58,361 bases of DNA from assembly GCF_026571515.1 (NCBI RefSeq), contig NW_026859270.1:62001-120361 (forward strand), in the 5' to 3' direction. Below are positions 6,711 through 58,361 of the stretch, in pieces. A model generated the notes under the pieces. It saw only the letters and a list, made by a program, of their open reading frames with translations, did not search any database and was not told the DNA's origin. Source of the stretch: Ruditapes philippinarum (Eukaryota). Position 1 is the stretch's first letter; each line of letters starts with the position of its first letter. A program made the translations under genes and the position numbers.

Positions 6711-7314
6711 TGATTCTTTAAACCAAACTCTTTGTTTAAAATCAAATTTGAATATGACAAGGACTCATTTGTTTTCTAAATACGACCATAGATGTTATCA
6801 TCATAATTTACGCTATTTATGACCTATATTGGACACAGGACTTATTTTGAAGATTGACACGTTGGAAAATGTACTTGTAGGCACCATGTGTCCTCGGCTA
6901 ATTCGTCCTGAGTCGTTTCGTCACAAAAACATCTCTGAGAAGTAATACTTGATGAAATACCGGATTAAGGTGATAATTTTTTTTCAAAACATATGATTAT
7001 TCACTCGTTAGATCAAAGAAAGATTTTTCATTTGTAATAACGTTTTGCAAACTATGATTTAAAAATCTTCAATTTCACAATCATTTTCTTCAAAAGGTTA
7101 CCAAAGAAATCAAAGAATGACAAAAACGTAAATTATATATAGATGACAAATACTGTTAAGTACCTTTAAATGTACGCTGTTTTGTTGTTGCAATTTACTA
7201 TAGTATTTAATTACATACTATACTTAGTGAATCAGTACTCATAGTAAACTTAACCCCGCGTGGCATTGAGACTCTTAATTGATAACCAATAGACATCTTT
7301 ATAAATGTTTAGTC

Positions 7315-7461
7315 ACAATTTTCGTGTTTAAATGTTGAATTCTGTTTAAACCGGTGCTAGCGGGCGGTGACGGTAACTTGCACTTTCCAGTTCCGTCGAT
7401 GAACAGGCTCAATCAAACCGAGCCTGCAACATTATCAATTTTGCTTTTAAGGGGTTCCTTT
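7315..7461 (+). mobile_element. Duplicated copy of the 26313 insertion, cut by an assembly gap
   Basis: Same left flank and same motif as 26313-26460; runs into Ns at 7462. Confidence 0.75.
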
Positions 7462-9175
7462 NNNNNNNNNNNNNNNNNNNNNNNNNNNNNNNNNNNNNNN
7501 NNNNNNNNNNNNNNNNNNNNNNNNNNNNNNNNNNNNNNNNNNNNNNNNNNNNNNNNNNNNNNNNNNNNNNNNNNNNNNNNNNNNNNNNNNNNNNNNNNNN
7601 NNNNNNTCTGGTATGATAAAATATATTTTACTGACTAGTATTTACTTTTGTGTGTGCTTCTTTCGTTGGTAGAAGAATGCAGTCCGTGCATCAAATACAT
7701 CATCATGAGTATTCAACGAGGTTAATAGACCATGTCAAATCTTTCAAAGCTACACCTGTCATATGTTTACAACACTTAAGCAGTAAGAATTATACATAAT
7801 ATTTATACTATACAAACTTATGTTGTTTAAATTTGGATTATATACTATAAACATAAACATTGCAGAAAAATGATGACATATTTATAATGATAGAATGTTT
7901 TATATAAAAAAAATTGTGAATGTGTCATTTACATGAAACAGGTTCTTCAATCTGGCATGATACAAAACACATTTTAGACAAGGCATTTTTGAATATTCCA
8001 TGTATTCTATGTTCACTTCCATTGAGTGTATCGGTGGAATACTTTTCGGTATACTGGACTTGAGATCAAATGGTTTTAAACAATTTTAATGCACCTCCAT
8101 TATCTAAATCGCACTGTTATTAAAAAAGTTTGAACCAATATCATATGAATACTTAACTGTAGCTATATCTCAAGAGATAATTAAATAATATTTAGTTCCA
8201 GATCAGGTGTCTTTATTAAAATTAAACCACTTTGATTTAGCGTCCATCTATAAAATTTTCAGAGTGATAAATGTATAAAATAAATTATTAAATACTGTAT
8301 AATCAAATCTAAATTTGCAGATTTGTAGAAAGAAAAATAAACACAAATAAAATGATGATTATATTTTAATAAATTCATTTTTTCTGCCAATCCTCAATAT
8401 AATCAATCATTCTTTGACTTATTTATTTGGAATATAACAGCAATAATGATAAGCTACATATTAATATATAAAATTTCAGTTTTATCTTATGTGCAGTTTG
8501 CATCTGACATTGATATGAATATGTATTTGTCAATAAACTATTACAAATATGAATCCGACTCAATTAGAAATTAGTTACATGCTTGGAGGATCGGCGATTT
8601 TAGCGATATTCCCTCTATTGTCTTATAGAAAGGAAAACTTCATTATGTCGAAGTTAGATACTTGCGTAGAAACTTCGACACATCGGGTCTTCGACTTATG
8701 AATATACATGCATATTGTTATAAGTTAAGCAGTGTGGCGTTCAAATTTATCCTAATTAATTAAATGACTCTAAGCTTAATTTTGAAGATAATTATAGTCG
8801 CATCGTAGTATCCTGAAAATACCAAATGCGATGACAAAAATAATAAGATTGGAGATTCTTGTCATGAATGTAGGAACTAATTAAGGTTAAAGAGAGTGAA
8901 GCATTGCTGGACAATTTGTTTTTTCCTTTCTTTATTTAGTTCATTGAGATCCACCAATTTGTTGTTTATATTTCAAATCAGGAAAATTCTTATCCTGGTC
9001 AGGTTTTATGTTTTAATGATAACAATGTTTCCCTTTATTAGAATCTTTGTCTCTAAAACGGACAAAAATAGTTTCTAAGTACTTGAATACTTCTAATGTA
9101 TATGTTATTCGTTAATTTCTTGATTCTTTGATAATAATTTAAGCGCATACATTGATTAACTGTGAAATGCGACTT

Positions 9176-9578
9176 TGAGGGATGTTGCACTTATTCATAA
9201 TCCCTCATGTACAGACTCAATCAAACCGAGTCTGCAATTCTTATGTAATTTTGTTGTGATAATGCTTCCGAGGGATCACTTTGTTTCCAGATTTTTATAC
9301 TTCACAACAGCAGGTGTCAAGTGCTCTGTGGCAGCTGTAAAAAGTTGCCCCGTACTTCACTTCAGTGTTGTTATATTTTTCTGGTCCTTCGGGATCATTG
9401 ATGCCAGCACTATTAAGTGTTGAGAATTGAGTACCGCTCAAGCCGGTGCTAGGGGGCGTGAGGGATGTTGCACTTATTCATAATCCCTCATGTACAGACT
9501 CAATCAAACCGAGTCTGCAATTCTTATGTAATTTTGTTGTGATAATGCTTCCGAGGGATCACTTTGTTTCCAGATTTT
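9176..9578 (+). mobile_element. Small insertion with identical 120-bp terminal direct repeats (283-bp period, ~1.4 copies); retrozyme-, Penelope pLTR- or TRIM-like
   Basis: 9176-9295 equals 9459-9578. Absent from the four paralogous X blocks (empty site aaatgcgtcttt|aataataa, e.g. ~28081-28100). Confidence 0.85.
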
Positions 9579-10419
9579 AATAATAAATTTACAGCGCATA
9601 TTGATTTTTGCCTTAACCGATTAGAAACAAATATCTTAATTTATACCCAGACAAACATTTGTATCTATATAGCTTGTATTTATAAAGCTCAATTCATACT
9701 GATAGTACAGAAATATTTATAAATAATCACAATATATCTTACGAATCAAATATATATGGATTTAATAAAGTGCCAGAACGTGAGACATACATTGTGAATG
9801 TATGAAATAAATGAGAGTACAGAAAGCAAATTGCAACAATGATGTACCGGCGTTCATTTAGTTAAATGAAAGGTCAACCTTACATTGGTCCATTGTTTAA
9901 TGAAATTTCGAATCAGGAATATTGTTATTCCGCTCAGATCTAATGCGTATTGTTTTCTTCATTTGGTATTTCTTGCGACGTTTATTGTTCAATAGTTAAG
10001 TAAAGTGTTGTTGTGTCGTATAATAAACTCGACAAGTGTTAAACCTTTTGCAAATTTTAAATACAGAGAAAAGTGCATGTTGTAAGCATTCGTTCAATCG
10101 AACCTTAAAATTTCATTTTAAAGAATCAAGCGAGCTGCAACAGAAAATATAGCTAGCTTAAGCATCAGTCAACTTTGAAATATCAAATCACGATGGAACA
10201 AATAATATGGGCTATTTCGAAATGTTGCCGCCAAGTCATACATTGAAAGTCAATTTGTTATAACTCGAATACCCCGTTAACATAAATAAGTCTGCAAGGG
10301 TCTTTATATTTATACATAATGTTATACATTTAGTTTGAGAATAATGTGGTACATTGGTGGCATGCCATTAATACATAATGTTAAATAATTTTAACAAACT
10401 GGATTTAAGGTACACATGA

Positions 10420-10678
10420 AAATGAAGTATACCATTTTTATTTATATAAAGAATAAAGTATACCATTTTTATTGATATAAAAATGGAATATACCATTTTA
10501 AATGATGTAAAATGAAGCATATCACTTTTGTTGATTGATGTATAAAAATGAATTTTACCATTTTATTGATATAAGAATGAAGTATACTATTTCTATTGAT
10601 ATTAAAATGAAGAATATAATTTTATTTGATTTTAAAAAATGATGTATACCATTTTTTACTGATATTAGAATGAAGTAT
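10420..10678. repeat. ~29-30 bp minisatellite (aaaaatgaagtataccatttttattgatat)
   Basis: Degenerate tandem units; also at ~17968-18175, ~28931-29175, ~38594-38778 and ~48651-48922 with varying copy number. Confidence 0.85.
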
Positions 10679-10821
10679 TAATCAACCAGAAAAATATCTG
10701 GCCTAAGAATAAGGTGACAAGCCTTAGTAAAAATAACAACTTATTTATAAAACATCTATTTCCAAATGTAGATAACTTTGTAGATAAAAAAAAAAAAAGT
10801 ATTTCCTCAAACATTACTTAC

Positions 10822-24533: not shown

Positions 24534-25526
24534 TTTCTCTTCTATTCTCATTAGAGCAATACTTCATAAAAATTGCTAAAATTATAATATTGTGTTCACA
24601 TATAGATAAGAAATGAGGTCAGTGTCATGTAGTATGTCTTGCATATATTAGTGATTAAAGTACTAATATACGACTTTAATGTATACGTTTCTAAAATTGG
24701 AAATGCATATTTTTATCTTCAAGATATTGAAATGACTTGGTGCCTAGGTCAATGTTGTAATTTTAGTCATATGCTACATATAATACATGCATACAATTCT
24801 AAAATTGAAAAAATAGTTTTATCAAATAAGTCTCAGTATCTAAGTATTTGTTGCTATAGTTTGGTCAGTCCTTCACGATGGGTAATTTTATCGAATGGTA
24901 CATATGTCATACTCGTGAGAAAAACAGATTTTACAAGTTACGAGCTTTCCAAACTATTGTTTAAAGTCCATGAATTTGCTTTCCAAACTATTATTTAGAG
25001 TCCATGAATTTGATAAGAAAAATTGGAATGCCCGTGAGAATGTTTAAAAAAAAGATTCACTGAATTTGATAAGTAGTTATTTAAATGGCCGTGAGAATGT
25101 TTAAAATATTATTTTGAATTAAGGTATTACCATCCTAATGCCTTACCTCCACTTTGAAGAGTATTCAAATAGGCTAACTACTGTTAACTACATTAAAACT
25201 GAGGGCCATGGGTTCAAACCTCAGATGGGTCATTTTTTTCTTTCTTTTTTTTTCTTTTAACATTATTTATGTTTCTTTCCATCCATTTTGGGTATAAAAA
25301 TGTTTATTTTTTATTATTTAATTATTTTCCTACTTAGGGAGCCTAAAAATCCTTAAAATTTACGCGATTGAGTGCCTGTTTTCAAAGTTTCCCTTTTTCC
25401 AAAAAGTATATTGGTTGATCTTGTAAAATATTAAATACTTTCACCGTCTAGTTTTGATTTTATTACACTTTGAAAATATCAGGTACCATATTAATTACTA
25501 GATTAAGCATTATTTAGCCAATCAAT

Positions 25527-25807
25527 AAATAGATGGCAAGTGACCTAGCCATGCGGAGATCTCCTGGACATATGACTTGGGTTAGGGCGTTAAGCCTTTT
25601 CATGTGCAAAGAAGACGCTCTCTAGTTGTACAAAATCAAATTTGCAACGGAATTGATCAAAGAACTTTTAAATAGTAGGCTCGTGAATATGCTTTTTCTT
25701 CCCGAAATTTACATAGGGAAAGAACAAATCGCCGGTGCAAAAAATGACCAAGCCACGTGGAAATCTCCTGACATATTACTTGGGTTAGGGCTTTAGGCCT
25801 TTCCATG
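25527..25807. repeat. Truncated start (~1.4 monomers) of the same satellite
   Basis: Same monomer and same left flank as 54742 onward. Confidence 0.9.
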
Positions 25808-25999
25808 ACTTCGATGACTTCTAATCCAATTACCTCTCTGGCGTGGGATCAATCCCCGGGAGATGTTTTGGTAGTTTAGCACGGAGGAAGGTAGTCTAGT
25901 ACTGGTGTTACTCTCCAAGAACGATGGTTAGGACACTACCTGTCTACATGACTGAAATACTGTTGGGAAAAGGCGTAAAATGAAACAAACAAACAAACA
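25808..25999 (+). mobile_element. Diverged tRNA-derived SINE of a second family, at the large duplication junction
   Basis: Degenerate B-box gtgggatcaatcccc, 3' end catgactgaaatactgttgggaaaaggcgtaaaa plus (AAAC)n tail. Confidence 0.65.
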
Positions 26000-26312
26000 T
26001 CTACTAGATCAAAGAAGGGTTATTTTTGGTATATCATTGTGCAAACAATGTTTTAAAAATCCCAAATTTCACAATCATTTTCTTCAAAAGGTAATCAAAG
26101 AAATCAAAGAATGACAAAAACGTAAATTACATATACATGTAGATAACAAATACTGTTGAATACCTTTAAATGTACGCTATCATTGTTTTGTTGTTGCAGT
26201 TTATTTAATTACAATCTATACTTAGTGCATCAGTACTCATAGTTAACTTAACCCCGCGTAGTATTGAGACTCTAAATTGATACAAAAGTCTAATTTTTAT
26301 AAAGGTTTAGTC

Positions 26313-26482
26313 ACCATTTTCGTGTTTAAATGTAGAATTCTGCTTAAGCCGGTGATAGCGGGCGGTGACGGTAAGTTGCACTTTTCCAGTATCGTCAATG
26401 AACAGGCTCAATCAAACCGAGCCTGCAACATTATCAATTTTGCCCTTTACGGGTTCCTTTAGGAATTCTGATTTTCTCTATT
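26313..26482 (+). mobile_element. ~170-bp insertion related to the 9176 element (shared structured motif)
   Basis: Empty site atgtttagtc|ttaaagacaa at ~14701-14720. Contains aagccggtgatagcgggcggtgacgg..gttgcac..caggctcaatcaaaccgagcctgcaa. Confidence 0.75.
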
Positions 26483-26489
26483 TTAAGAC

Positions 26490-53784: not shown

Positions 53785-54741
53785 TTTCTCTTCTATTTTC
53801 ATTAGAGCAATACTTCATAAAAATTGCTAAAATTACAATATTGTGTTCACATATAGATACGAAATGAGGTCAGTGGCATGTAGTATGTCTTGCATATATA
53901 AGTGAATGCGACGTAGTTTTAAATCACTAGTATACGATTTTAAAGTATACGATCTAAAATTGGAAAGGATTTTTTTATCTTCAAAATATAGAAATGACTT
54001 AATGCCTCGGTCAATACATTGTGTTGTAATTTTAGTCATATGCTACATAGTATACATGCATACAATTCTAAAATTGAAAAATTAGTTTTATCATATGAGT
54101 GTCAGTATCAAAGTCATTGTTTCTATAATTATGTCAGTCCTTCACAACAGGTAATCTAATCGAATGAGAAAAACAGATTTTACAAGTTACGAGCTTTCCA
54201 AACTATTATTGAGAGTCCATTAATTTGATTAGAAAAATTGGAATGTCCGTGAGAATGTTAAAAAAGATTCACTGAATTTGATAAGTAATTATTTAAATGG
54301 CCGTGAGAATGTTTAAAATATTATTTTGAATTAAGGTATTACCATCCTAATGCCTTACCTCCACTTTGAAGAGTATTCAAATAGGTTAGAACTACTGTTA
54401 ACTACATTGAAAATGAGGGCCATGGGTTCAAACCTCTAATGGGTCAACTTTTTCTTTCTTTTTTTTCTTTTAACATTATTTATGTTTCTTTCCATCCATT
54501 TTGGGTAGAAAAAAGTGTTTATTTTTTATTATTTATTTTCCTACTTAGGGAGCCAACAAATTCCTTAAAAATTACCCGAATGAGTGCCTGTTTTCAAAGT
54601 TTTCCTAAATTTTCAAAAAAGTATATTGGTTGATCTTCTAAAATATTACATACTTTTACCGTCTTGTTTTGATTTTATTACGCTTTGAACATATCAGGTA
54701 CCATATCTATAACTAGATTTAGCATTATTTAGCCAATCAAT

Positions 54742-57700
54742 AAATAGCTGGCAAGTGGCCTAGTCATGCGGAGATCTCATGGACGTGTTCTTTGGGTTAG
54801 GGCTTTAGCCCTTATCATGTTCAAAGAAGACCCTCTCTAGTAATACAAAATCTAATTTGCAACGGAAATGATCAAATGGTATTTTGAATGGTAGGCTCGT
54901 GAATATGATGTTTCTTCCCGAAATTTACATAGAGAAAGAACAAATCGCCGGTACAAAAAATGACCAAGCCACGCGGAAATCTCCTGCACATATAACTTGG
55001 GTTAGGGCTTTAGGCCTTTTCATGCTCAAAGGAGACCCTCTCAAGTTGTACAAAATTAAATTTGCAACGGAAATGATCAAATGGTTTTTGAATGGTTGGC
55101 TCGTAAATATGATGTTTCTTCCCGAAAATTACATAGAGAAAAAACAAATCGCCGGTGCAAAAAATGACCAAGCCACGCGGAAATCTCCTGGACATATTAC
55201 TTGGGTTAGGGCTTTAGGCATTTTCATGTGTAAAAGAAGACCCTCTCTAGTTATACAAAATCGAATTTGCATTTGAATTGGTCAAATGCCTTTTGAACGG
55301 TTAGCTAGTAAAATTGATGTTTCTTCCGAAATTTATATACAGAAAAAGCAAATAGCTGGCAAGTGACCTAACCATGCAGAGATCTCATGGACGTGTTCTT
55401 TGAGTTAGGGCCTTAAGCTTTATCATGTGCAAAGAAGACCCTCTCAAGTTGTACAAAATAAAATTGATTTGAAACGGAATTGATCAAATGGTTTTTGAAT
55501 GGTAGGCTCGTGAATATGATGTTTCTTTTCGAAATTTACATAGAGAGAGAACAAATCGCCGGTGCAAAAAAAAGACCAAGCAACGCGGAAATCTCCTGGA
55601 CATATTTCTTGGGTAAGGGCTTTAAGCTTTTTCATGTGTCCAAAATTTATATACAGAAAAAGCAAATGGCTGGCAAGTGACCTAGCCATGCAGAGATCTC
55701 ATGGACGTGTCCCTTGGGTTAGGGCTTTAAGCCTTATCACGTGCAAAGAAGACCCTCTCAAGTTGTTCAAAATCAAATTGCAACGGAATTGCTCAAACGG
55801 TGTTTGAATGGTAGGCTCGTGAATATGATGTTTCTTCCCAACATTCACATAGAGAAAGAACAAATCACAGGTGTAAAAATGACCAAGACACGCGGAATTC
55901 TCCTGGACATATTACTTTGGTTAGGGCTTTAGGCCTTTTCATGTTCAAAGATCGTCTCAAGTTGTACAAAATCAAATTTGCAACGGAATAAATCTAAGGC
56001 TTTTTGAATGGTAGGCTCGTGAATATGATGTTTTTCTCGAAATTTACATAGAGAAAAAACAAACCGCCGATGCAAAAAATGACCAATCCTCGCGAAAATC
56101 TCCCGGACATATTACTTGGGTTAGGGCATTGAGCCTTTTCATATCCAAAGAAGACCCTCTCTAATGGTACAAAATCGATTTGCATTGGAATTGGTCAAAT
56201 TGCTTTTGAACGGTAGGCTCGTAATTTTCTGTTATTTATGAATTATTATACAGAAAAAGCAAATCGCTGGCAAGTGACCTAGCCATGCGGAGTTCTCATG
56301 GACGTGTTCCTTGGGTTAGGGCTTTAAACCTTATCAAGTGCAAAGAAGACCTTCTCAAGTTGTACAAAATCAAAATTGCAGCGGAATTGATCAATGCTTT
56401 TTTAATTGTTGGCTCGTGAATATAGTGTTCTTTTCCGAAATTTACATAGAGAATAAACAAATCGCCGATGCAAAAAATGACCAATCTACGCGGAAATCTC
56501 CTAGACATATTACTGGGGTTAGGGCATTAGGCCTTTTCATGTCCAAAGAAAACCCTCTCTAGTGGTACAAAATCGATTTGCATTGGAATTGGTCAAATGG
56601 CTTTTGAACGGTAGGCTCGTAAAATTAATGTTTTTTTTCCCCAAAATTCATATACAGAAGAAGCAAATCGCTGGCAAGTGACCTAGCCATGCGGAGATCT
56701 CATGGACGTGTTCCTTGGTTTAGGGGTTTAAGCGTTATCATTTGCCAAGGAAACCCTCTCAAATTGTACAAAATTAAATTTGCAACGGAATTGATCAAAT
56801 GGTTTTTGAATGGTAGGCTCGTGAAAAAGATGTTTCTTCCCGAAATTTATATAGGGAAAGAACAAATCGCCGGTGCAAAAAAATGACCAAGACACGCGGA
56901 AATCTCCTGGAAATATTAGTTGGGTTAGGGCTTAAGGCCTTTTTATGTGCAAAGAAGACCCTTTTTACCAGTACAAAATCGAATTTGCATTGGAATTGGT
57001 CAATGGCTTTTGAACAGTAGGCTCGTAAAATTGATGTTTTTTTTTTCCGAAATTTATATAAAGTAAAAGCAAATCGCTGGCATGTGACCTAGCCATGCAG
57101 AAATCCCATGGACGTGTCCCTTGAGTCATTGGGTTAAGGCTTTAAGCCTTATCATGTGCAAAGAAGACCCTCTCTAGTTGTACAAAATTGAATTTGAATT
57201 GGAATGGGTGAAATGGCTTTTGAACGGTAGGCTCGTAAAATTGACGTTTTTTTCCGAAATTTATATACTGGAAAGCAAATCGCTGGCAAAATGCGGAGAT
57301 CTCATTGACGTGTTCCTTTGGTTAGGGCTCTAAACCTTATAATGTGCAAAGAAGACCCTCTCAAGTTGTACAAAATCAAATTTGCAACGGAATTGATCAA
57401 ATGGTTTTTGAATGGTAGGCTCGTGAATATGATGTTTCTTTTCGAAATTTACATAGAGAGAGAACAAATCGCCGGTGCAAAAAATAACGAAGCCCCGCGG
57501 AAATCTCCTTGACATATTACTTGGGTTAGGGCTTTAGGCCTTTTCATGTGCAAAGAAGACCCTCTCTTGTTGTACAAAATCGAATTTGCATTGGAATTGG
57601 TCAAATGGCTTTTAAACGGTAGGCTTGCAAAATTGATGTTTTTTCCTAAATTTATATACAGAAAAACCAAATCGCTGACAAATGACCGAGCCATGCGGAG

Positions 57701-58361
57701 ATCTCATGGACATATTCCTTGGGTTAAGGCTTTAAGCTTTATCATGTGCAAAGAAGTCCCTCTCAAGTTGTACAAAATCAAATTTGCAACGGAATTGATC
57801 AAATGATTTTTGAATGGTAGGCTCGTGAATATGATTTTTCTTCCCGAAATTTACATAGAGAAAGAACAAATCGCCGGTGCAAAAAATGACCAAGCCATAC
57901 GGACATCTCCTGGACATATTACTTGGGTTAGGGCTTTAGGCCTTTTCATGTGCAAAAAAGACCATCTCTAGTTGTACAAAATCGAAATTGCATTGGAATT
58001 GGTCAAATGGCTTTTCAACGGTAGGCTCGTAAAATTGGTGTTTTTTTTCCGACATTTATATACAGAAAAAGCAAATCGCTGGCAAATGACCTAGTCATGC
58101 GGAGATCCCATGGACGTGTTCCTTGGGTTAGGGCTTTAAGCCTTTTCATGTGCAAAGAAGACCCTCTCAAGTTGTACAAAAATCAAATTTGCAACGGAAT
58201 TGATCAACTGTTTTTTGACTAGTAGGCTCGTGAATATGATGTTTCTTTTCGAAATTTACATATAGAAAGAACAAAACGCCTGTGCAAAAAATAACGAAGC
58301 CACGCGGAAATCTCCTGGACATATTACTTTGTTTAGGGCTTTAGGCCTTTTCATGTTCAAA
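54742..58361. repeat. ~204-bp satellite array with two monomer subtypes, each with GGGTTAGGG; runs off the window
   Basis: ttgggttagggcttta recurs at 54792, 54997, 55201 and onward; roughly 18 monomers. Confidence 0.95.

What the first reader, a model, noticed from the sequence alone, without database searches (positions are those of the whole stretch)
9176..9578. 283-nt, 1.4-copy, densely base-paired insertion resembling a reverse-transcribed circular RNA (retrozyme-like, but without a hammerhead)
Seen: identical 120-bp direct repeats 283 bp apart, inserted at a TTT in only one of five X paralogues, so probably recent. The unique part folds into a long rod 9304-9371 (ACAACA/TGTTGT, AGGTG/CACTT, AAGTGC/GTACTT, GGCAGCT/AGTTGCC), a C(UUCG)G hairpin 9383-9396 and CAGCACT/AGTGTTG 9405-9422. 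Every non-Watson-Crick pair in these stems is G.U on the + strand, indicating strand-specific folding. Homology to element 2 continues across the repeat boundary at 9459, which fits a circularly permuted or tandem unit better than true LTRs (no CA end, no PBS seen). Known: animal retrozymes are short tandem units thought to be mobilised by Penelope-like elements via circRNA. Inference: a non-autonomous retroelement family using a different RNA motif.
Basis: partly seen in the sequence, partly recalled or inferred. Interest (0 to 1): 0.8.

Follow-up and report, generated by a model that had tools for sequence, protein, structure and literature searches.

The report
Known clam mini-retroelement, probably misclassified
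This is a young copy of a short clam jumping element already published as 'biv-TRIM'; its copies all share one end and are cut short at the other, so it probably spreads from a tightly folded RNA the way Penelope-type elements do, not as the LTR element it was named.

Summary
Window 9176-9582 is a 1.44-unit copy of a 283-nt unit, with 124-nt terminal repeats differing at 1 base. It is absent from four paralogous sites.

The family is in print as 'biv-TRIM' (Satovic et al. 2019, PMC6934838), described on the opposite strand as an LTR-type TRIM. The paper's primer and conserved segment match this copy at 19/20 and 13/14 bases.

My data do not fit a TRIM:
- The 3' ends are fixed (25 of 38 arrays), while the 5' ends are scattered.
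- Arrays run from 0.15 to more than 8.8 units.
- There is no regular target duplication.
- A 630-nt sister family and relatives in six metagenome contigs share the same 3' end and unit order.

The + strand RNA is unusually structured (z -5.4, against -1.3 for the minus strand). The fold is kept through compensatory changes.

No hammerhead, twister or other Rfam ribozyme was found. No autonomous partner was found either; five canonical Penelope families do not share the tail.

Best reading: a pseudo-LTR, target-primed, non-autonomous element that is Penelope-like and resembles a retrozyme without a hammerhead. A circular RNA template is possible but not shown.

The parts
9176..9582 (+). Whole insertion: 1.44 units of the 283-nt family-1 (biv-TRIM) unit
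9176..9299 (+). First copy of the terminal redundancy (unit positions 1-124), a 'pseudo-LTR'
9459..9582 (+). Second copy of the terminal redundancy. Its end is the family's fixed 3' terminus.
9304..9371 (+). Rod hairpin, tipped by the GGCAGC...GUUGCC stem. It matches part of the paper's TDR-F primer region on the minus strand. A cluster of family 5' ends lies in its 3' arm.
9385..9402 (+). 5' strand of the long-range helix, overlapping the alternative local UUCG hairpin at 9383-9396. On the minus strand it holds the paper's conserved inner-domain segment.
9542..9558 (+). 3' strand of the long-range helix (also at 9259-9275 in the first repeat)
9421..9429 (+). 5' strand of the helix that closes the four-way junction. 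It pairs with 9518-9526 (also 9235-9243).
9430..9458 (+). Hairpin Hx (9430-9450, loop CUCAAGC) plus the G-rich junction (9451-9458). This is the most conserved block; the paper's primer TDR-R matches 9434-9453(-) at 19/20.
9459..9490 (+). Hairpin H1 (also 9176-9207). It has 6 pairs with compensatory changes across lineages.
9495..9517 (+). Hairpin H2 with a conserved loop (also 9212-9234). Found at about 90% identity in the other families.
9570..9582 (+). U-rich unpaired linker where genomic copies end; inferred site where reverse transcription starts
   Evidence: end positions; start of reverse transcription is inference
9174..9176 (+). Target TTT. The duplication is at most 3 bp and is ambiguous because the element itself ends in a T run.
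26311..26486 (+). 5'-truncated copy of sister family 2 ('element 2'; full unit about 630 nt), followed by an (AAT)n run
7312..7462 (+). Paralogous copy of the same family-2 insertion, cut by the N run 7463-7606 (not filled)

Best explanation
The feature is a recent copy of the bivalve repeat family published as biv-TRIM. It is a non-coding, non-autonomous retroelement. Its + strand RNA folds into a rod hairpin plus a long helical domain capped by a four-way junction.

Inferred mechanism: a reverse transcriptase supplied in trans starts cDNA synthesis on nicked target DNA. It starts at one fixed place, a U-rich unpaired linker between the two folded domains. It then copies the template for a variable distance, often for more than one unit, because the template is either a head-to-tail multimer or a circle. 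It stops at variable points.

This gives a fixed 3' end, scattered 5' ends, 0.15 to more than 8.8 units per insertion, and, whenever more than one unit is copied, a terminal redundancy that looks like a pair of LTRs (a pseudo-LTR).

This is the insertion style of Penelope-like elements and of animal non-LTR retrozymes, but the element has no hammerhead. The most likely helper is a Penelope-like element. The hammerhead-less Naiad clade, abundant in clams, is the obvious candidate, but no Naiad could be located or tested here.

Shown: the copy anatomy, the end statistics, the lack of a regular TSD, and the conserved strand-specific fold. Inferred: target-primed reverse transcription, the start site, and the helper. 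Open: whether the template is circular.
For: Ends:
- 25 of 38 de-duplicated family-1 arrays end at unit position 119-125.
- With a permuted consensus, 32 of 41 family-1 and 43 of 59 family-2 3' ends lie in the last 8 nt. This includes 15 of 23 family-2 copies in loci fetched for other reasons.
- Only 2 of 44 and 3 of 58 5' ends lie in the first 8 nt (overlapping loci were not de-duplicated there).
- Family-2 5' extents run continuously from 0 to more than 1200 nt.
- Relatives in metagenome contigs end at the homologous place and show the same tandem junction.

Target sites:
- Two empty-site comparisons give 0-3 bp of T only.
- In 65 copies, flank matches of 5 nt or more occur in 13, against 12 expected from shuffled pairings.

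Fold:
- z -5.36 on the + strand against -1.28 on the minus strand.
- Tail hairpins are 97.5% paired, with 7 pairs changed on both sides; 0 of 500 shuffles and no slid register reach this.
- Of 95 family-1 pairs read in the family-2 consensus, 52 are the same, 19 compensatory, 5 changed on one side, 15 broken and 4 gapped.
- With the metagenome relatives, 93.9% of cells pair and 13 pairs are compensatory.

Arrays: units within an array are 97.4% alike, against 94.6% between arrays.

Precedent: non-autonomous Penelope-like elements with pLTRs and multicopy head-to-tail insertions were once described as non-autonomous LTR elements (MRC1). Naiads lack hammerheads and are abundant in invertebrates (passages of PMC8557442).
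Against: - No autonomous partner was found. Two canonical Penelope families next to copies end at their own 3' ends (0 of 39 and 0 of 39 other copies run on into the element).
- The 30 GIY-YIG loci, which hold at least five canonical families (groupings, plus the L091 type fetched), show no tail similarity beyond 3 chance neighbours.
- No N-terminal-endonuclease (Naiad) copy could be located.
- The 30-40 bp 'tail' extension and the inverted 5' copies typical of Penelope insertions are not a regular feature. Inverted neighbours were seen in about 2 loci only.
- About a quarter to a third of arrays do not end at the terminus, mostly in rearranged loci.
- The covariation rests on only about 4-5 independent lineages.
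- The RNA-seq reads show no preferred ends and come largely from a few particular copies.
Confidence: 0.62

Rival explanations
1. It is a SINE-like element mobilised by a LINE, by stringent recognition of the structured 3' tail. Insertions are single 5'-truncated units, and the multi-unit arrays and terminal redundancy arise from tandem master copies or later unequal crossing-over.
For: The fixed 3' end, 5' truncation and conserved 3' hairpins are equally what a LINE-dependent element shows. The paper reports a median locus length of 126 bp and 96% of loci shorter than one unit. LINE reverse transcriptase fragments are present in the genome.
Against: No Pol III head was found (ARAGORN 0 genes in 5 loci; no tRNA, 5S or 7SL match in Rfam scans). 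There is no A-rich or microsatellite tail in most copies. Partial head-to-tail tandems are the typical form in three lineages, including another organism. The window copy was inserted as 1.44 units in one event. The only LINE found next to a copy is simply interrupted by it.
Confidence: 0.2
2. It is what it was published as: a TRIM, a non-autonomous LTR retrotransposon. Arrays and solo repeats would come from recombination between LTRs.
For: Direct terminal repeats flank a short internal part in this copy, and the repeat starts with TG. The published description gives a purine tract and tandem 'TDRx_I(x-1)' arrays (PMC6934838, section 4).
Against: The repeat length is not constant. It is 124 nt here and 202-218 in the paper, because the 5' ends vary. 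There is no CA end and no regular 4-6 bp TSD. The paper itself found no PBS and no LTR partner, and it never mentions target-site duplications ('TSD' and 'target site' occur 0 times). The conserved RNA fold lies on the strand opposite to the published orientation.
Confidence: 0.06
3. It is a satellite-like tandem repeat spread by DNA-level processes such as unequal exchange, extrachromosomal circles that re-integrate, or Helitron/Helentron-type rolling-circle transposition.
For: Tandem arrays reach 8.8 units in held loci and 58 in the paper. Bivalve satellites are often linked to Helentrons (discussion of PMC6934838).
Against: Random breakage predicts random phases at both ends, but the 3' end is fixed, where about 1 of 41 would be expected by chance. 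There are no L/R flanking arms and no TC...CTRR ends. The conserved pairs include 11 G.U pairs on one strand only. This matches the + versus minus energy gap and points to selection on an RNA.
Confidence: 0.05

Closest known systems
biv-TRIM (Satovic et al. 2019, Sci Rep 9:19962, PMC6934838)
   Same: It is the same family. TDR (202-218) plus inner domain (77-80) gives the 283-nt unit. Primer TDR-R matches 9434-9453(-) at 19/20, and the conserved inner-domain segment matches 9384-9397(-) at 13/14. The species is the same according to earlier scan notes. Tandem arrays and mostly sub-unit fragments agree, as do the absence of a PBS and of a partner.
   Different: The paper files it as an LTR-type TRIM, in the opposite orientation. 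Here the 'LTR' length varies from copy to copy, one end is fixed and the other is not, and no regular TSD exists. Primer TDR-F does not match this copy within 3 mismatches.
Animal non-LTR retrozymes (Cervera & de la Pena 2020, PMC7229834)
   Same: Short units (about 170-400 nt there, 283 here), low G+C (43%), head-to-tail arrays from dimers to large multimers, highly self-paired RNA, no PBS or PPT, non-coding (passages).
   Different: Retrozymes are defined by a type I hammerhead and by abundant circular RNA. Here there is no CUGANGA core on either strand, no Rfam ribozyme, and circles are untested.
Non-autonomous Penelope-like elements with pseudo-LTRs (e.g. MRC1/Chlamys; Naiad clade; Craig et al. 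2021, PMC8557442)
   Same: Frequent 5' truncation, partial tandems that form pLTRs, multicopy head-to-tail insertions, an earlier misreading as a non-autonomous LTR element, and, for Naiad/Chlamys, no canonical hammerhead (passages).
   Different: Those elements share their 3' ends with an identified autonomous family. Here no such family was found.
Plant TRIMs and LTR retrozymes
   Same: A small non-coding element with direct terminal repeats in some copies.
   Different: No fixed LTR, no PBS, no 4-bp TSD.

Membership tests
biv-TRIM repeat family (sequence membership) | Sequence identity to the published primers and conserved segment, and a unit of TDR plus inner domain | tested here: met
   TDR-R matches at 19/20 and the conserved segment at 13/14, both on the minus strand of this copy. 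Unit 283 = 202-218 + 77-80. TDR-F gave no match within 3 mismatches.
TRIM / LTR retrotransposon | Two terminal direct repeats of constant length with both element ends fixed | tested here: not met
   3' ends are fixed but 5' ends are scattered, and length runs from 0.15 to more than 8.8 units.
TRIM / LTR retrotransposon | Regular 4-6 bp target-site duplication | tested here: not met
   Two empty sites show 0-3 bp. In 65 copies the flank-match distribution equals the shuffled control.
TRIM / LTR retrotransposon | TG...CA termini, PBS next to the 5' repeat, PPT next to the 3' repeat | tested here: inconclusive
   This copy starts with TG but ends in a T run. ARAGORN finds no tRNA-like part. I did not test PBS complementarity to tRNA 3' ends; the paper reports none and gives a 7-nt purine tract on the other strand.
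Animal non-LTR retrozyme | Short tandem unit, low G+C, highly self-paired RNA | tested here: met
   283 nt, 43% G+C, z -5.36.
Animal non-LTR retrozyme | Type I hammerhead ribozyme in each unit | tested here: not met
   No CUGANGA...GAAA core on either strand of families 1 and 2, while a neighbouring Penelope tail scores as a positive control. Rfam scans up to E = 10 find none. However, Rfam also missed the control's minimal hammerhead-like core.
Animal non-LTR retrozyme | Monomeric circular RNA in vivo | not testable with these tools
   Tandem genomic copies make junction reads uninformative. No preferred read ends were seen in two RNA-seq runs.
Non-autonomous Penelope-like element | 5' truncation plus partial head-to-tail tandems (pseudo-LTR) | tested here: met
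Non-autonomous Penelope-like element | 3' end shared with an autonomous RT plus GIY-YIG element | tested here: not met
   Only 3 of 30 GIY-YIG loci have any hit, and all three are separate insertions. Two families were checked copy by copy: 0 of 39 and 0 of 39 run on into the element. Naiad-type elements could not be located, so they remain untested.
SINE | Pol III head (tRNA, 5S or 7SL) and a LINE-derived tail | tested here: inconclusive
   No head was found. The tail was not compared with LINE 3' ends genome-wide.
Twister ribozyme (lead from earlier scan notes on Naiad tails) | Match to the Rfam twister models | tested here: not met
   No twister hit at E <= 10 in 207 nt or 1001 nt. Twister-P5 gave 0 matches in the whole genome, though only 80 of 14721 candidates were scored. 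By eye, the order of helices around the AAGCC...GGGGG block does not fit a twister; this is my inference.
Helitron / Helentron | TC...CTRR ends, insertion at A^T or T^T, a 3' hairpin and both ends defined | tested here: not met
   The ends and targets read do not fit, and one end is variable.

The most novel reading that the evidence does not exclude
biv-TRIM-type elements are the hammerhead-less counterpart of animal retrozymes. A 283-nt viroid-like RNA circle or multimer is copied by rolling reverse transcription by a Naiad-type Penelope enzyme. The ultra-conserved hairpin-loop plus G-rich junction (9430-9458), together with hairpins H1 and H2, is either the enzyme's docking site or a self-cleaving/ligating motif of a class not yet described.
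Probability: 0.2. Interest if true: 0.8.

Novelty: new variant of a known kind. Interest (0 to 1): 0.45.

Why it matters
The family fills about 0.26% of the Manila clam genome (27,489 loci in PMC6934838; about 10^4 unit copies by my depth ratio). It occurs in many bivalves and has stood since 2019 as one of the few animal 'TRIMs', with no PBS and no partner.

If it is in fact a pseudo-LTR, target-primed element, three things follow:
- Animal TRIM lists and bivalve repeat annotation need correcting.
- The published puzzle of the missing PBS and missing partner gets an explanation.
- The retrozyme/Penelope way of making tandem repeats extends to an element without a hammerhead. This makes it directly testable whether a ribozyme is needed at all for that life cycle, and what the enzyme recognises in the RNA.

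Tried and rejected
Ribozymes
- Rfam scans at E <= 10 on 8900-9900 and on 9376-9582, and at E <= 1 on three loci, gave only chance-level matches.
- Twister-P5 over the whole genome gave nothing, but only 80 of 14721 candidates were scored.
- As a control, a Penelope tail with a clear CUGAAGA...GAAA core was not reported by Rfam either. The Rfam negative is therefore weak for minimal hammerheads; the regex negative carries that point.
- I considered HDV-like and twister-like foldings of the region around 9430-9520 by eye. I rejected them because the helix order does not fit. This is inference, not a test.

Partner search
- GIY-YIG loci, BLAST of both families against them, copy-by-copy checks of two Penelope families and the 3' limits of two more showed no shared tail.
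- All 30 top GIY-YIG hits, and 7 of 8 further ones, are C-terminal (canonical) types, so no Naiad was found.
- A 415-aa ORF upstream of one array has no Pfam match. An RT ORF next to a family-2 array is a LINE fragment interrupted by that array.
- A diverged tail variant in L090 turned out to be a rare relic.

Other tests
- tRNA-like head: none.
- TSD search: not different from the control.
- Default MAFFT misaligned the 5' half of families 1 and 2 (A2). I therefore used my own E-INS-i alignment for that comparison.
- RNAalifold on the gappy A4 alignment gave a poor consensus. I counted pairs on the projected fold of the window copy instead, which favours that fold.

Reads
- Runs X21 and X22 are labelled RNA-Seq but behave as Hi-C DNA. 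They show GATC-GATC ligation junctions at all three GATC sites, equal strands, and flank depth of about 1-2 per mate direction, roughly the genome coverage of the letters read. I used them only for copy number.

Not seen
- The supplements of PMC6934838 (Table S3, Fig. S1) may hold element boundaries. They were closed and not seen.

Literature searches
- 'biv-TRIM' gave 2 papers.
- retrozyme / Penelope-like / circRNA, retrozyme / twister / tandem and Ruditapes / satellite / tandem / transposable were also searched.
- None of the listed titles or abstracts, nor the passages I read, re-files biv-TRIM as a non-LTR element or reports a hammerhead-less retrozyme.

Full report
**What is there**

The window holds a 407-bp insertion at 9176-9582. 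It is built from a 283-nt unit, of which the first 124 nt are repeated at the end; the two repeats differ at 1 base. An alignment of the five roughly 10-kb paralogous segments of the window shows the insertion in one segment only. The other four read GCGTC-TTT-AATAAT at that point (TTA in one). The event is therefore young, and any target duplication is at most the TTT, which cannot be told apart from the element's own terminal T run.

**The family**

The genome is a 1.4-Gb eukaryote. Earlier scan notes call it the Manila clam.

- The 407-bp query finds 62 matches at 76-100% identity, out of 1068 first-look candidates.
- In two runs that are labelled RNA-Seq but behave as Hi-C genomic DNA, the element's depth is about 14,000 per mate direction, against about 1-2 per direction in the flanks. 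That is on the order of 10^4 unit copies. The Hi-C signs are GATC-GATC junctions at all three GATC sites and equal strands.
It has the same modules in the same order, plus a roughly 330-nt insert.
- A scan of metagenome contigs with a 19-nt pattern from the most conserved block returned 26 contigs. Six of them (L092, L098, L101, L103, L104, L111; 33-38% G+C) carry a third lineage, 73-82% identical to family 1, with the same unit order and the same tandem junction.

**Ends**

- Among 40 de-duplicated family-1 arrays, 38 do not touch a locus edge. Of these, 25 end at unit position 119-125, and one more ends at 127. The rest lie mostly in two rearranged loci.
- With a consensus monomer permuted to start just after this terminus, 32 of 41 family-1 3' ends and 43 of 59 family-2 3' ends fall in the last 8 nt (overlapping loci were not de-duplicated there). 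This includes 15 of 23 family-2 copies that sit by chance in loci fetched for other reasons. About 1 of 41 would be expected by chance.
- The 5' ends are scattered. Only 2 of 44 and 3 of 58 lie in the first 8 nt.
- Loose clusters of 5' ends lie in the 3' arm of the rod hairpin and around the four-way junction, not at one sharp position.
- Family-2 copies extend 0 to more than 1200 nt upstream of a common point, without a preferred start.
- Arrays range from 0.15 to more than 8.8 units.
- The two complete ends in the metagenome lineage lie at the homologous place.

So the '120-bp LTR' of this copy is simply what results when copying runs 1.44 units back from a fixed start.

**Target sites**

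A family-1 copy that landed inside a family-2 copy can be compared with the family-2 consensus. It has no duplication beyond 0-2 T, and two extra bases at the 5' junction. Over 65 copies with the regular 3' end, the best match between left and right flanks is 5 nt or longer in 13 copies, against 12.0 expected when flanks are paired at random. A regular 4-6 bp duplication is excluded. Short duplications that begin with the T(A) of the element's own end may exist in some copies; two looked like 7-8 nt.

**RNA fold**

- One unit folds at -97.4 kcal/mol on the + strand (z -5.36), against -68.6 (z -1.28) on the minus strand.
- The family-2 unit gives z -5.1 and -4.4, from 20 shuffles only.
- In the frame that starts after the 3' terminus, the family-1 consensus folds at -107.4 kcal/mol. 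It forms a rod hairpin plus a long helical domain in which the segment after the rod pairs with the 3' tail. That domain is capped by a four-way junction of hairpin Hx, a G-rich joint, H1 and H2.
- The genomic 3' terminus lies in the U-rich unpaired linker between the two domains.
- Eleven of the 95 pairs are G.U on the + strand.
- Read in the family-2 consensus, the 95 pairs are 52 unchanged, 19 changed on both sides and still paired, 5 changed on one side, 15 broken and 4 gapped.
- On a 43-sequence tail alignment, H1 and H2 are 97.5% paired, with 7 pairs changed on both sides. None of 500 shuffles reaches this, and slid registers give 0-3.
- On family 1 plus the metagenome lineage, the projected fold is 93.9% paired, with 13 compensatory pairs against 2-9 in slid registers.

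Caveats: there are only about 4-5 independent lineages, and the tested fold was derived from one of the sequences.

**Ribozymes**

No Rfam family comes close. Neither strand of either family contains a CUGANGA core, while a neighbouring Penelope tail does. That control was itself missed by Rfam.

Earlier scan notes report twister-like motifs in Naiad tails of this genome. I took this as a lead. The conserved AAGCC...GGGGG block recalled a twister to me, but no twister model matches, and the helix order does not fit.

**It is already in print**

Satovic et al. 2019 (PMC6934838; I read the outline, section 4 part 1, section 10 and searched passages) described 'biv-TRIM' in eleven bivalves, including Ruditapes philippinarum.

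- TDRs of 202-218 bp plus an inner domain of 77-80 bp add up to this unit.
- In the clam draft genome they report 27,489 loci, a median length of 126 bp, 96% of loci shorter than one copy, and arrays up to 58 repeats.
- They report transcripts in TSA/EST data, no PBS and no autonomous partner.
- Their primer TDR-R matches 9434-9453 on the minus strand at 19 of 20 bases. Their conserved inner-domain segment matches 9384-9397 on the minus strand at 13 of 14. TDR-F does not match within 3 mismatches.
- The words 'TSD' and 'target site' do not occur in the paper.
- Only one other paper in the library mentions biv-TRIM.

**How it most likely works**

The anatomy is that of target-primed reverse transcription from a fixed internal or 3' site, with a template longer than one unit. 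Partial head-to-tail tandems with heavy 5' truncation are the hallmark of Penelope-like elements. Craig et al. 2021 note that non-autonomous ones with pLTRs and multicopy head-to-tail insertions were earlier taken for non-autonomous LTR elements. They also note that the Naiad clade lacks hammerheads and is very abundant in invertebrates, including clams (passages of PMC8557442). Animal non-LTR retrozymes share the unit size, low G+C, tandem form and self-paired RNA, but carry a hammerhead and form circles (passages of PMC7229834).

Units within one array are more alike (97.4%, 35 pairs) than units of different arrays (94.6%, 785 pairs). Both repeats of the window copy share minority variants of the family at the same unit positions, for example 9199 and 9482. 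This fits copying one template sequence more than once, but it also fits later homogenisation.

**What the reads say**

Two RNA-seq runs (X23, X24) cover the element at 40-270 per mate direction, with zero in the flanks. Their variant spectrum is unlike the genomic one: at 9352, A is read in 3% of DNA reads (X21) but in 52-61% of RNA reads. Loose ends with 0.99 agreement point to a few particular copies inside longer transcripts. No place shows many molecules starting or ending.

Fourteen older runs from eleven studies hold 68-75% of the sampled words, but their RNA label is only a guess. Transcription is therefore likely. An abundant discrete small RNA is not shown.

**Partner**

None was found.

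- Only 3 of the 30 GIY-YIG loci contain any family sequence.
- In the two cases where a copy sits just downstream of a Penelope ORF in the same orientation, 0 of 39 and 0 of 39 other copies of that Penelope family continue into it.
- All 30 loci, and 7 of 8 further hits, have the endonuclease at the C-terminus, so no Naiad was sampled.

**Verdict**

This is a real, young copy of a known family. It contradicts the published TRIM label. The circular-RNA template and the Penelope helper remain inferences.

Noticed in passing
window 1-58361: The window is built of about five diverged copies of a roughly 10-kb segment (repeat families with spacings of about 7-11 kb). The biv-TRIM copy and the family-2 copies can be dated relative to these duplications: family 2 at 7312 and 26311 predates one duplication, and the 9176 insertion postdates them.
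   Followed up: partly
window 54600-58361 and 25410-25850: Satellite-like array with a period of about 203 bp (16 copies of a 142-nt core, 61-84% alike). One outlying copy lies 29 kb upstream.
   Followed up: no
window 10418-10680: Short array of a roughly 31-nt AT-rich unit with internal inverted repeats.
   Followed up: no
runs X21 and X22: Two public runs labelled transcriptomic RNA-Seq behave as Hi-C genomic libraries: GATC-GATC ligation junctions, chimeric reads at every GATC site, and flank depth close to genome coverage. They should not be used as expression evidence.
   Followed up: partly
L091 (G000:C10567:25400-29000), minus strand, about 280 nt after the GIY-YIG ORF's stop codon: A canonical Penelope family has a CUGAAGA-helix-GAAA hammerhead-like core in its tail. 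Rfam's models did not report it at E <= 10.
   Followed up: partly
L029 (G000:C13045:1889-5292) 189-723: A family-1 array is inserted into a family-2 copy. This gives a clean filled/empty comparison: no duplication beyond 0-2 T, and two extra bases at the 5' junction.
   Followed up: yes
L051 602-1225 and 1092-2824: A 5'-truncated LINE reverse transcriptase fragment (RVT_1, E 2.4e-12) is interrupted by a 2.7-unit family-2 array in the same orientation.
   Followed up: partly
L092, L098, L101, L103, L104, L111 (metagenome contigs): Environmental contigs of low G+C carry a related element lineage, presumably DNA of another mollusc. L098 and L104 hold the same sequence from two samples.
   Followed up: partly
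unit loop of H1 (9186-9191, 9469-9474) and the bases just after H2 (9515-9519): The conserved loop UUGCA(C) is complementary to the conserved UGCAA that overlaps the end of H2, so a pseudoknot is possible. One lineage keeps it through a G-C to G.U change, and one degenerate copy breaks it.
   Followed up: partly
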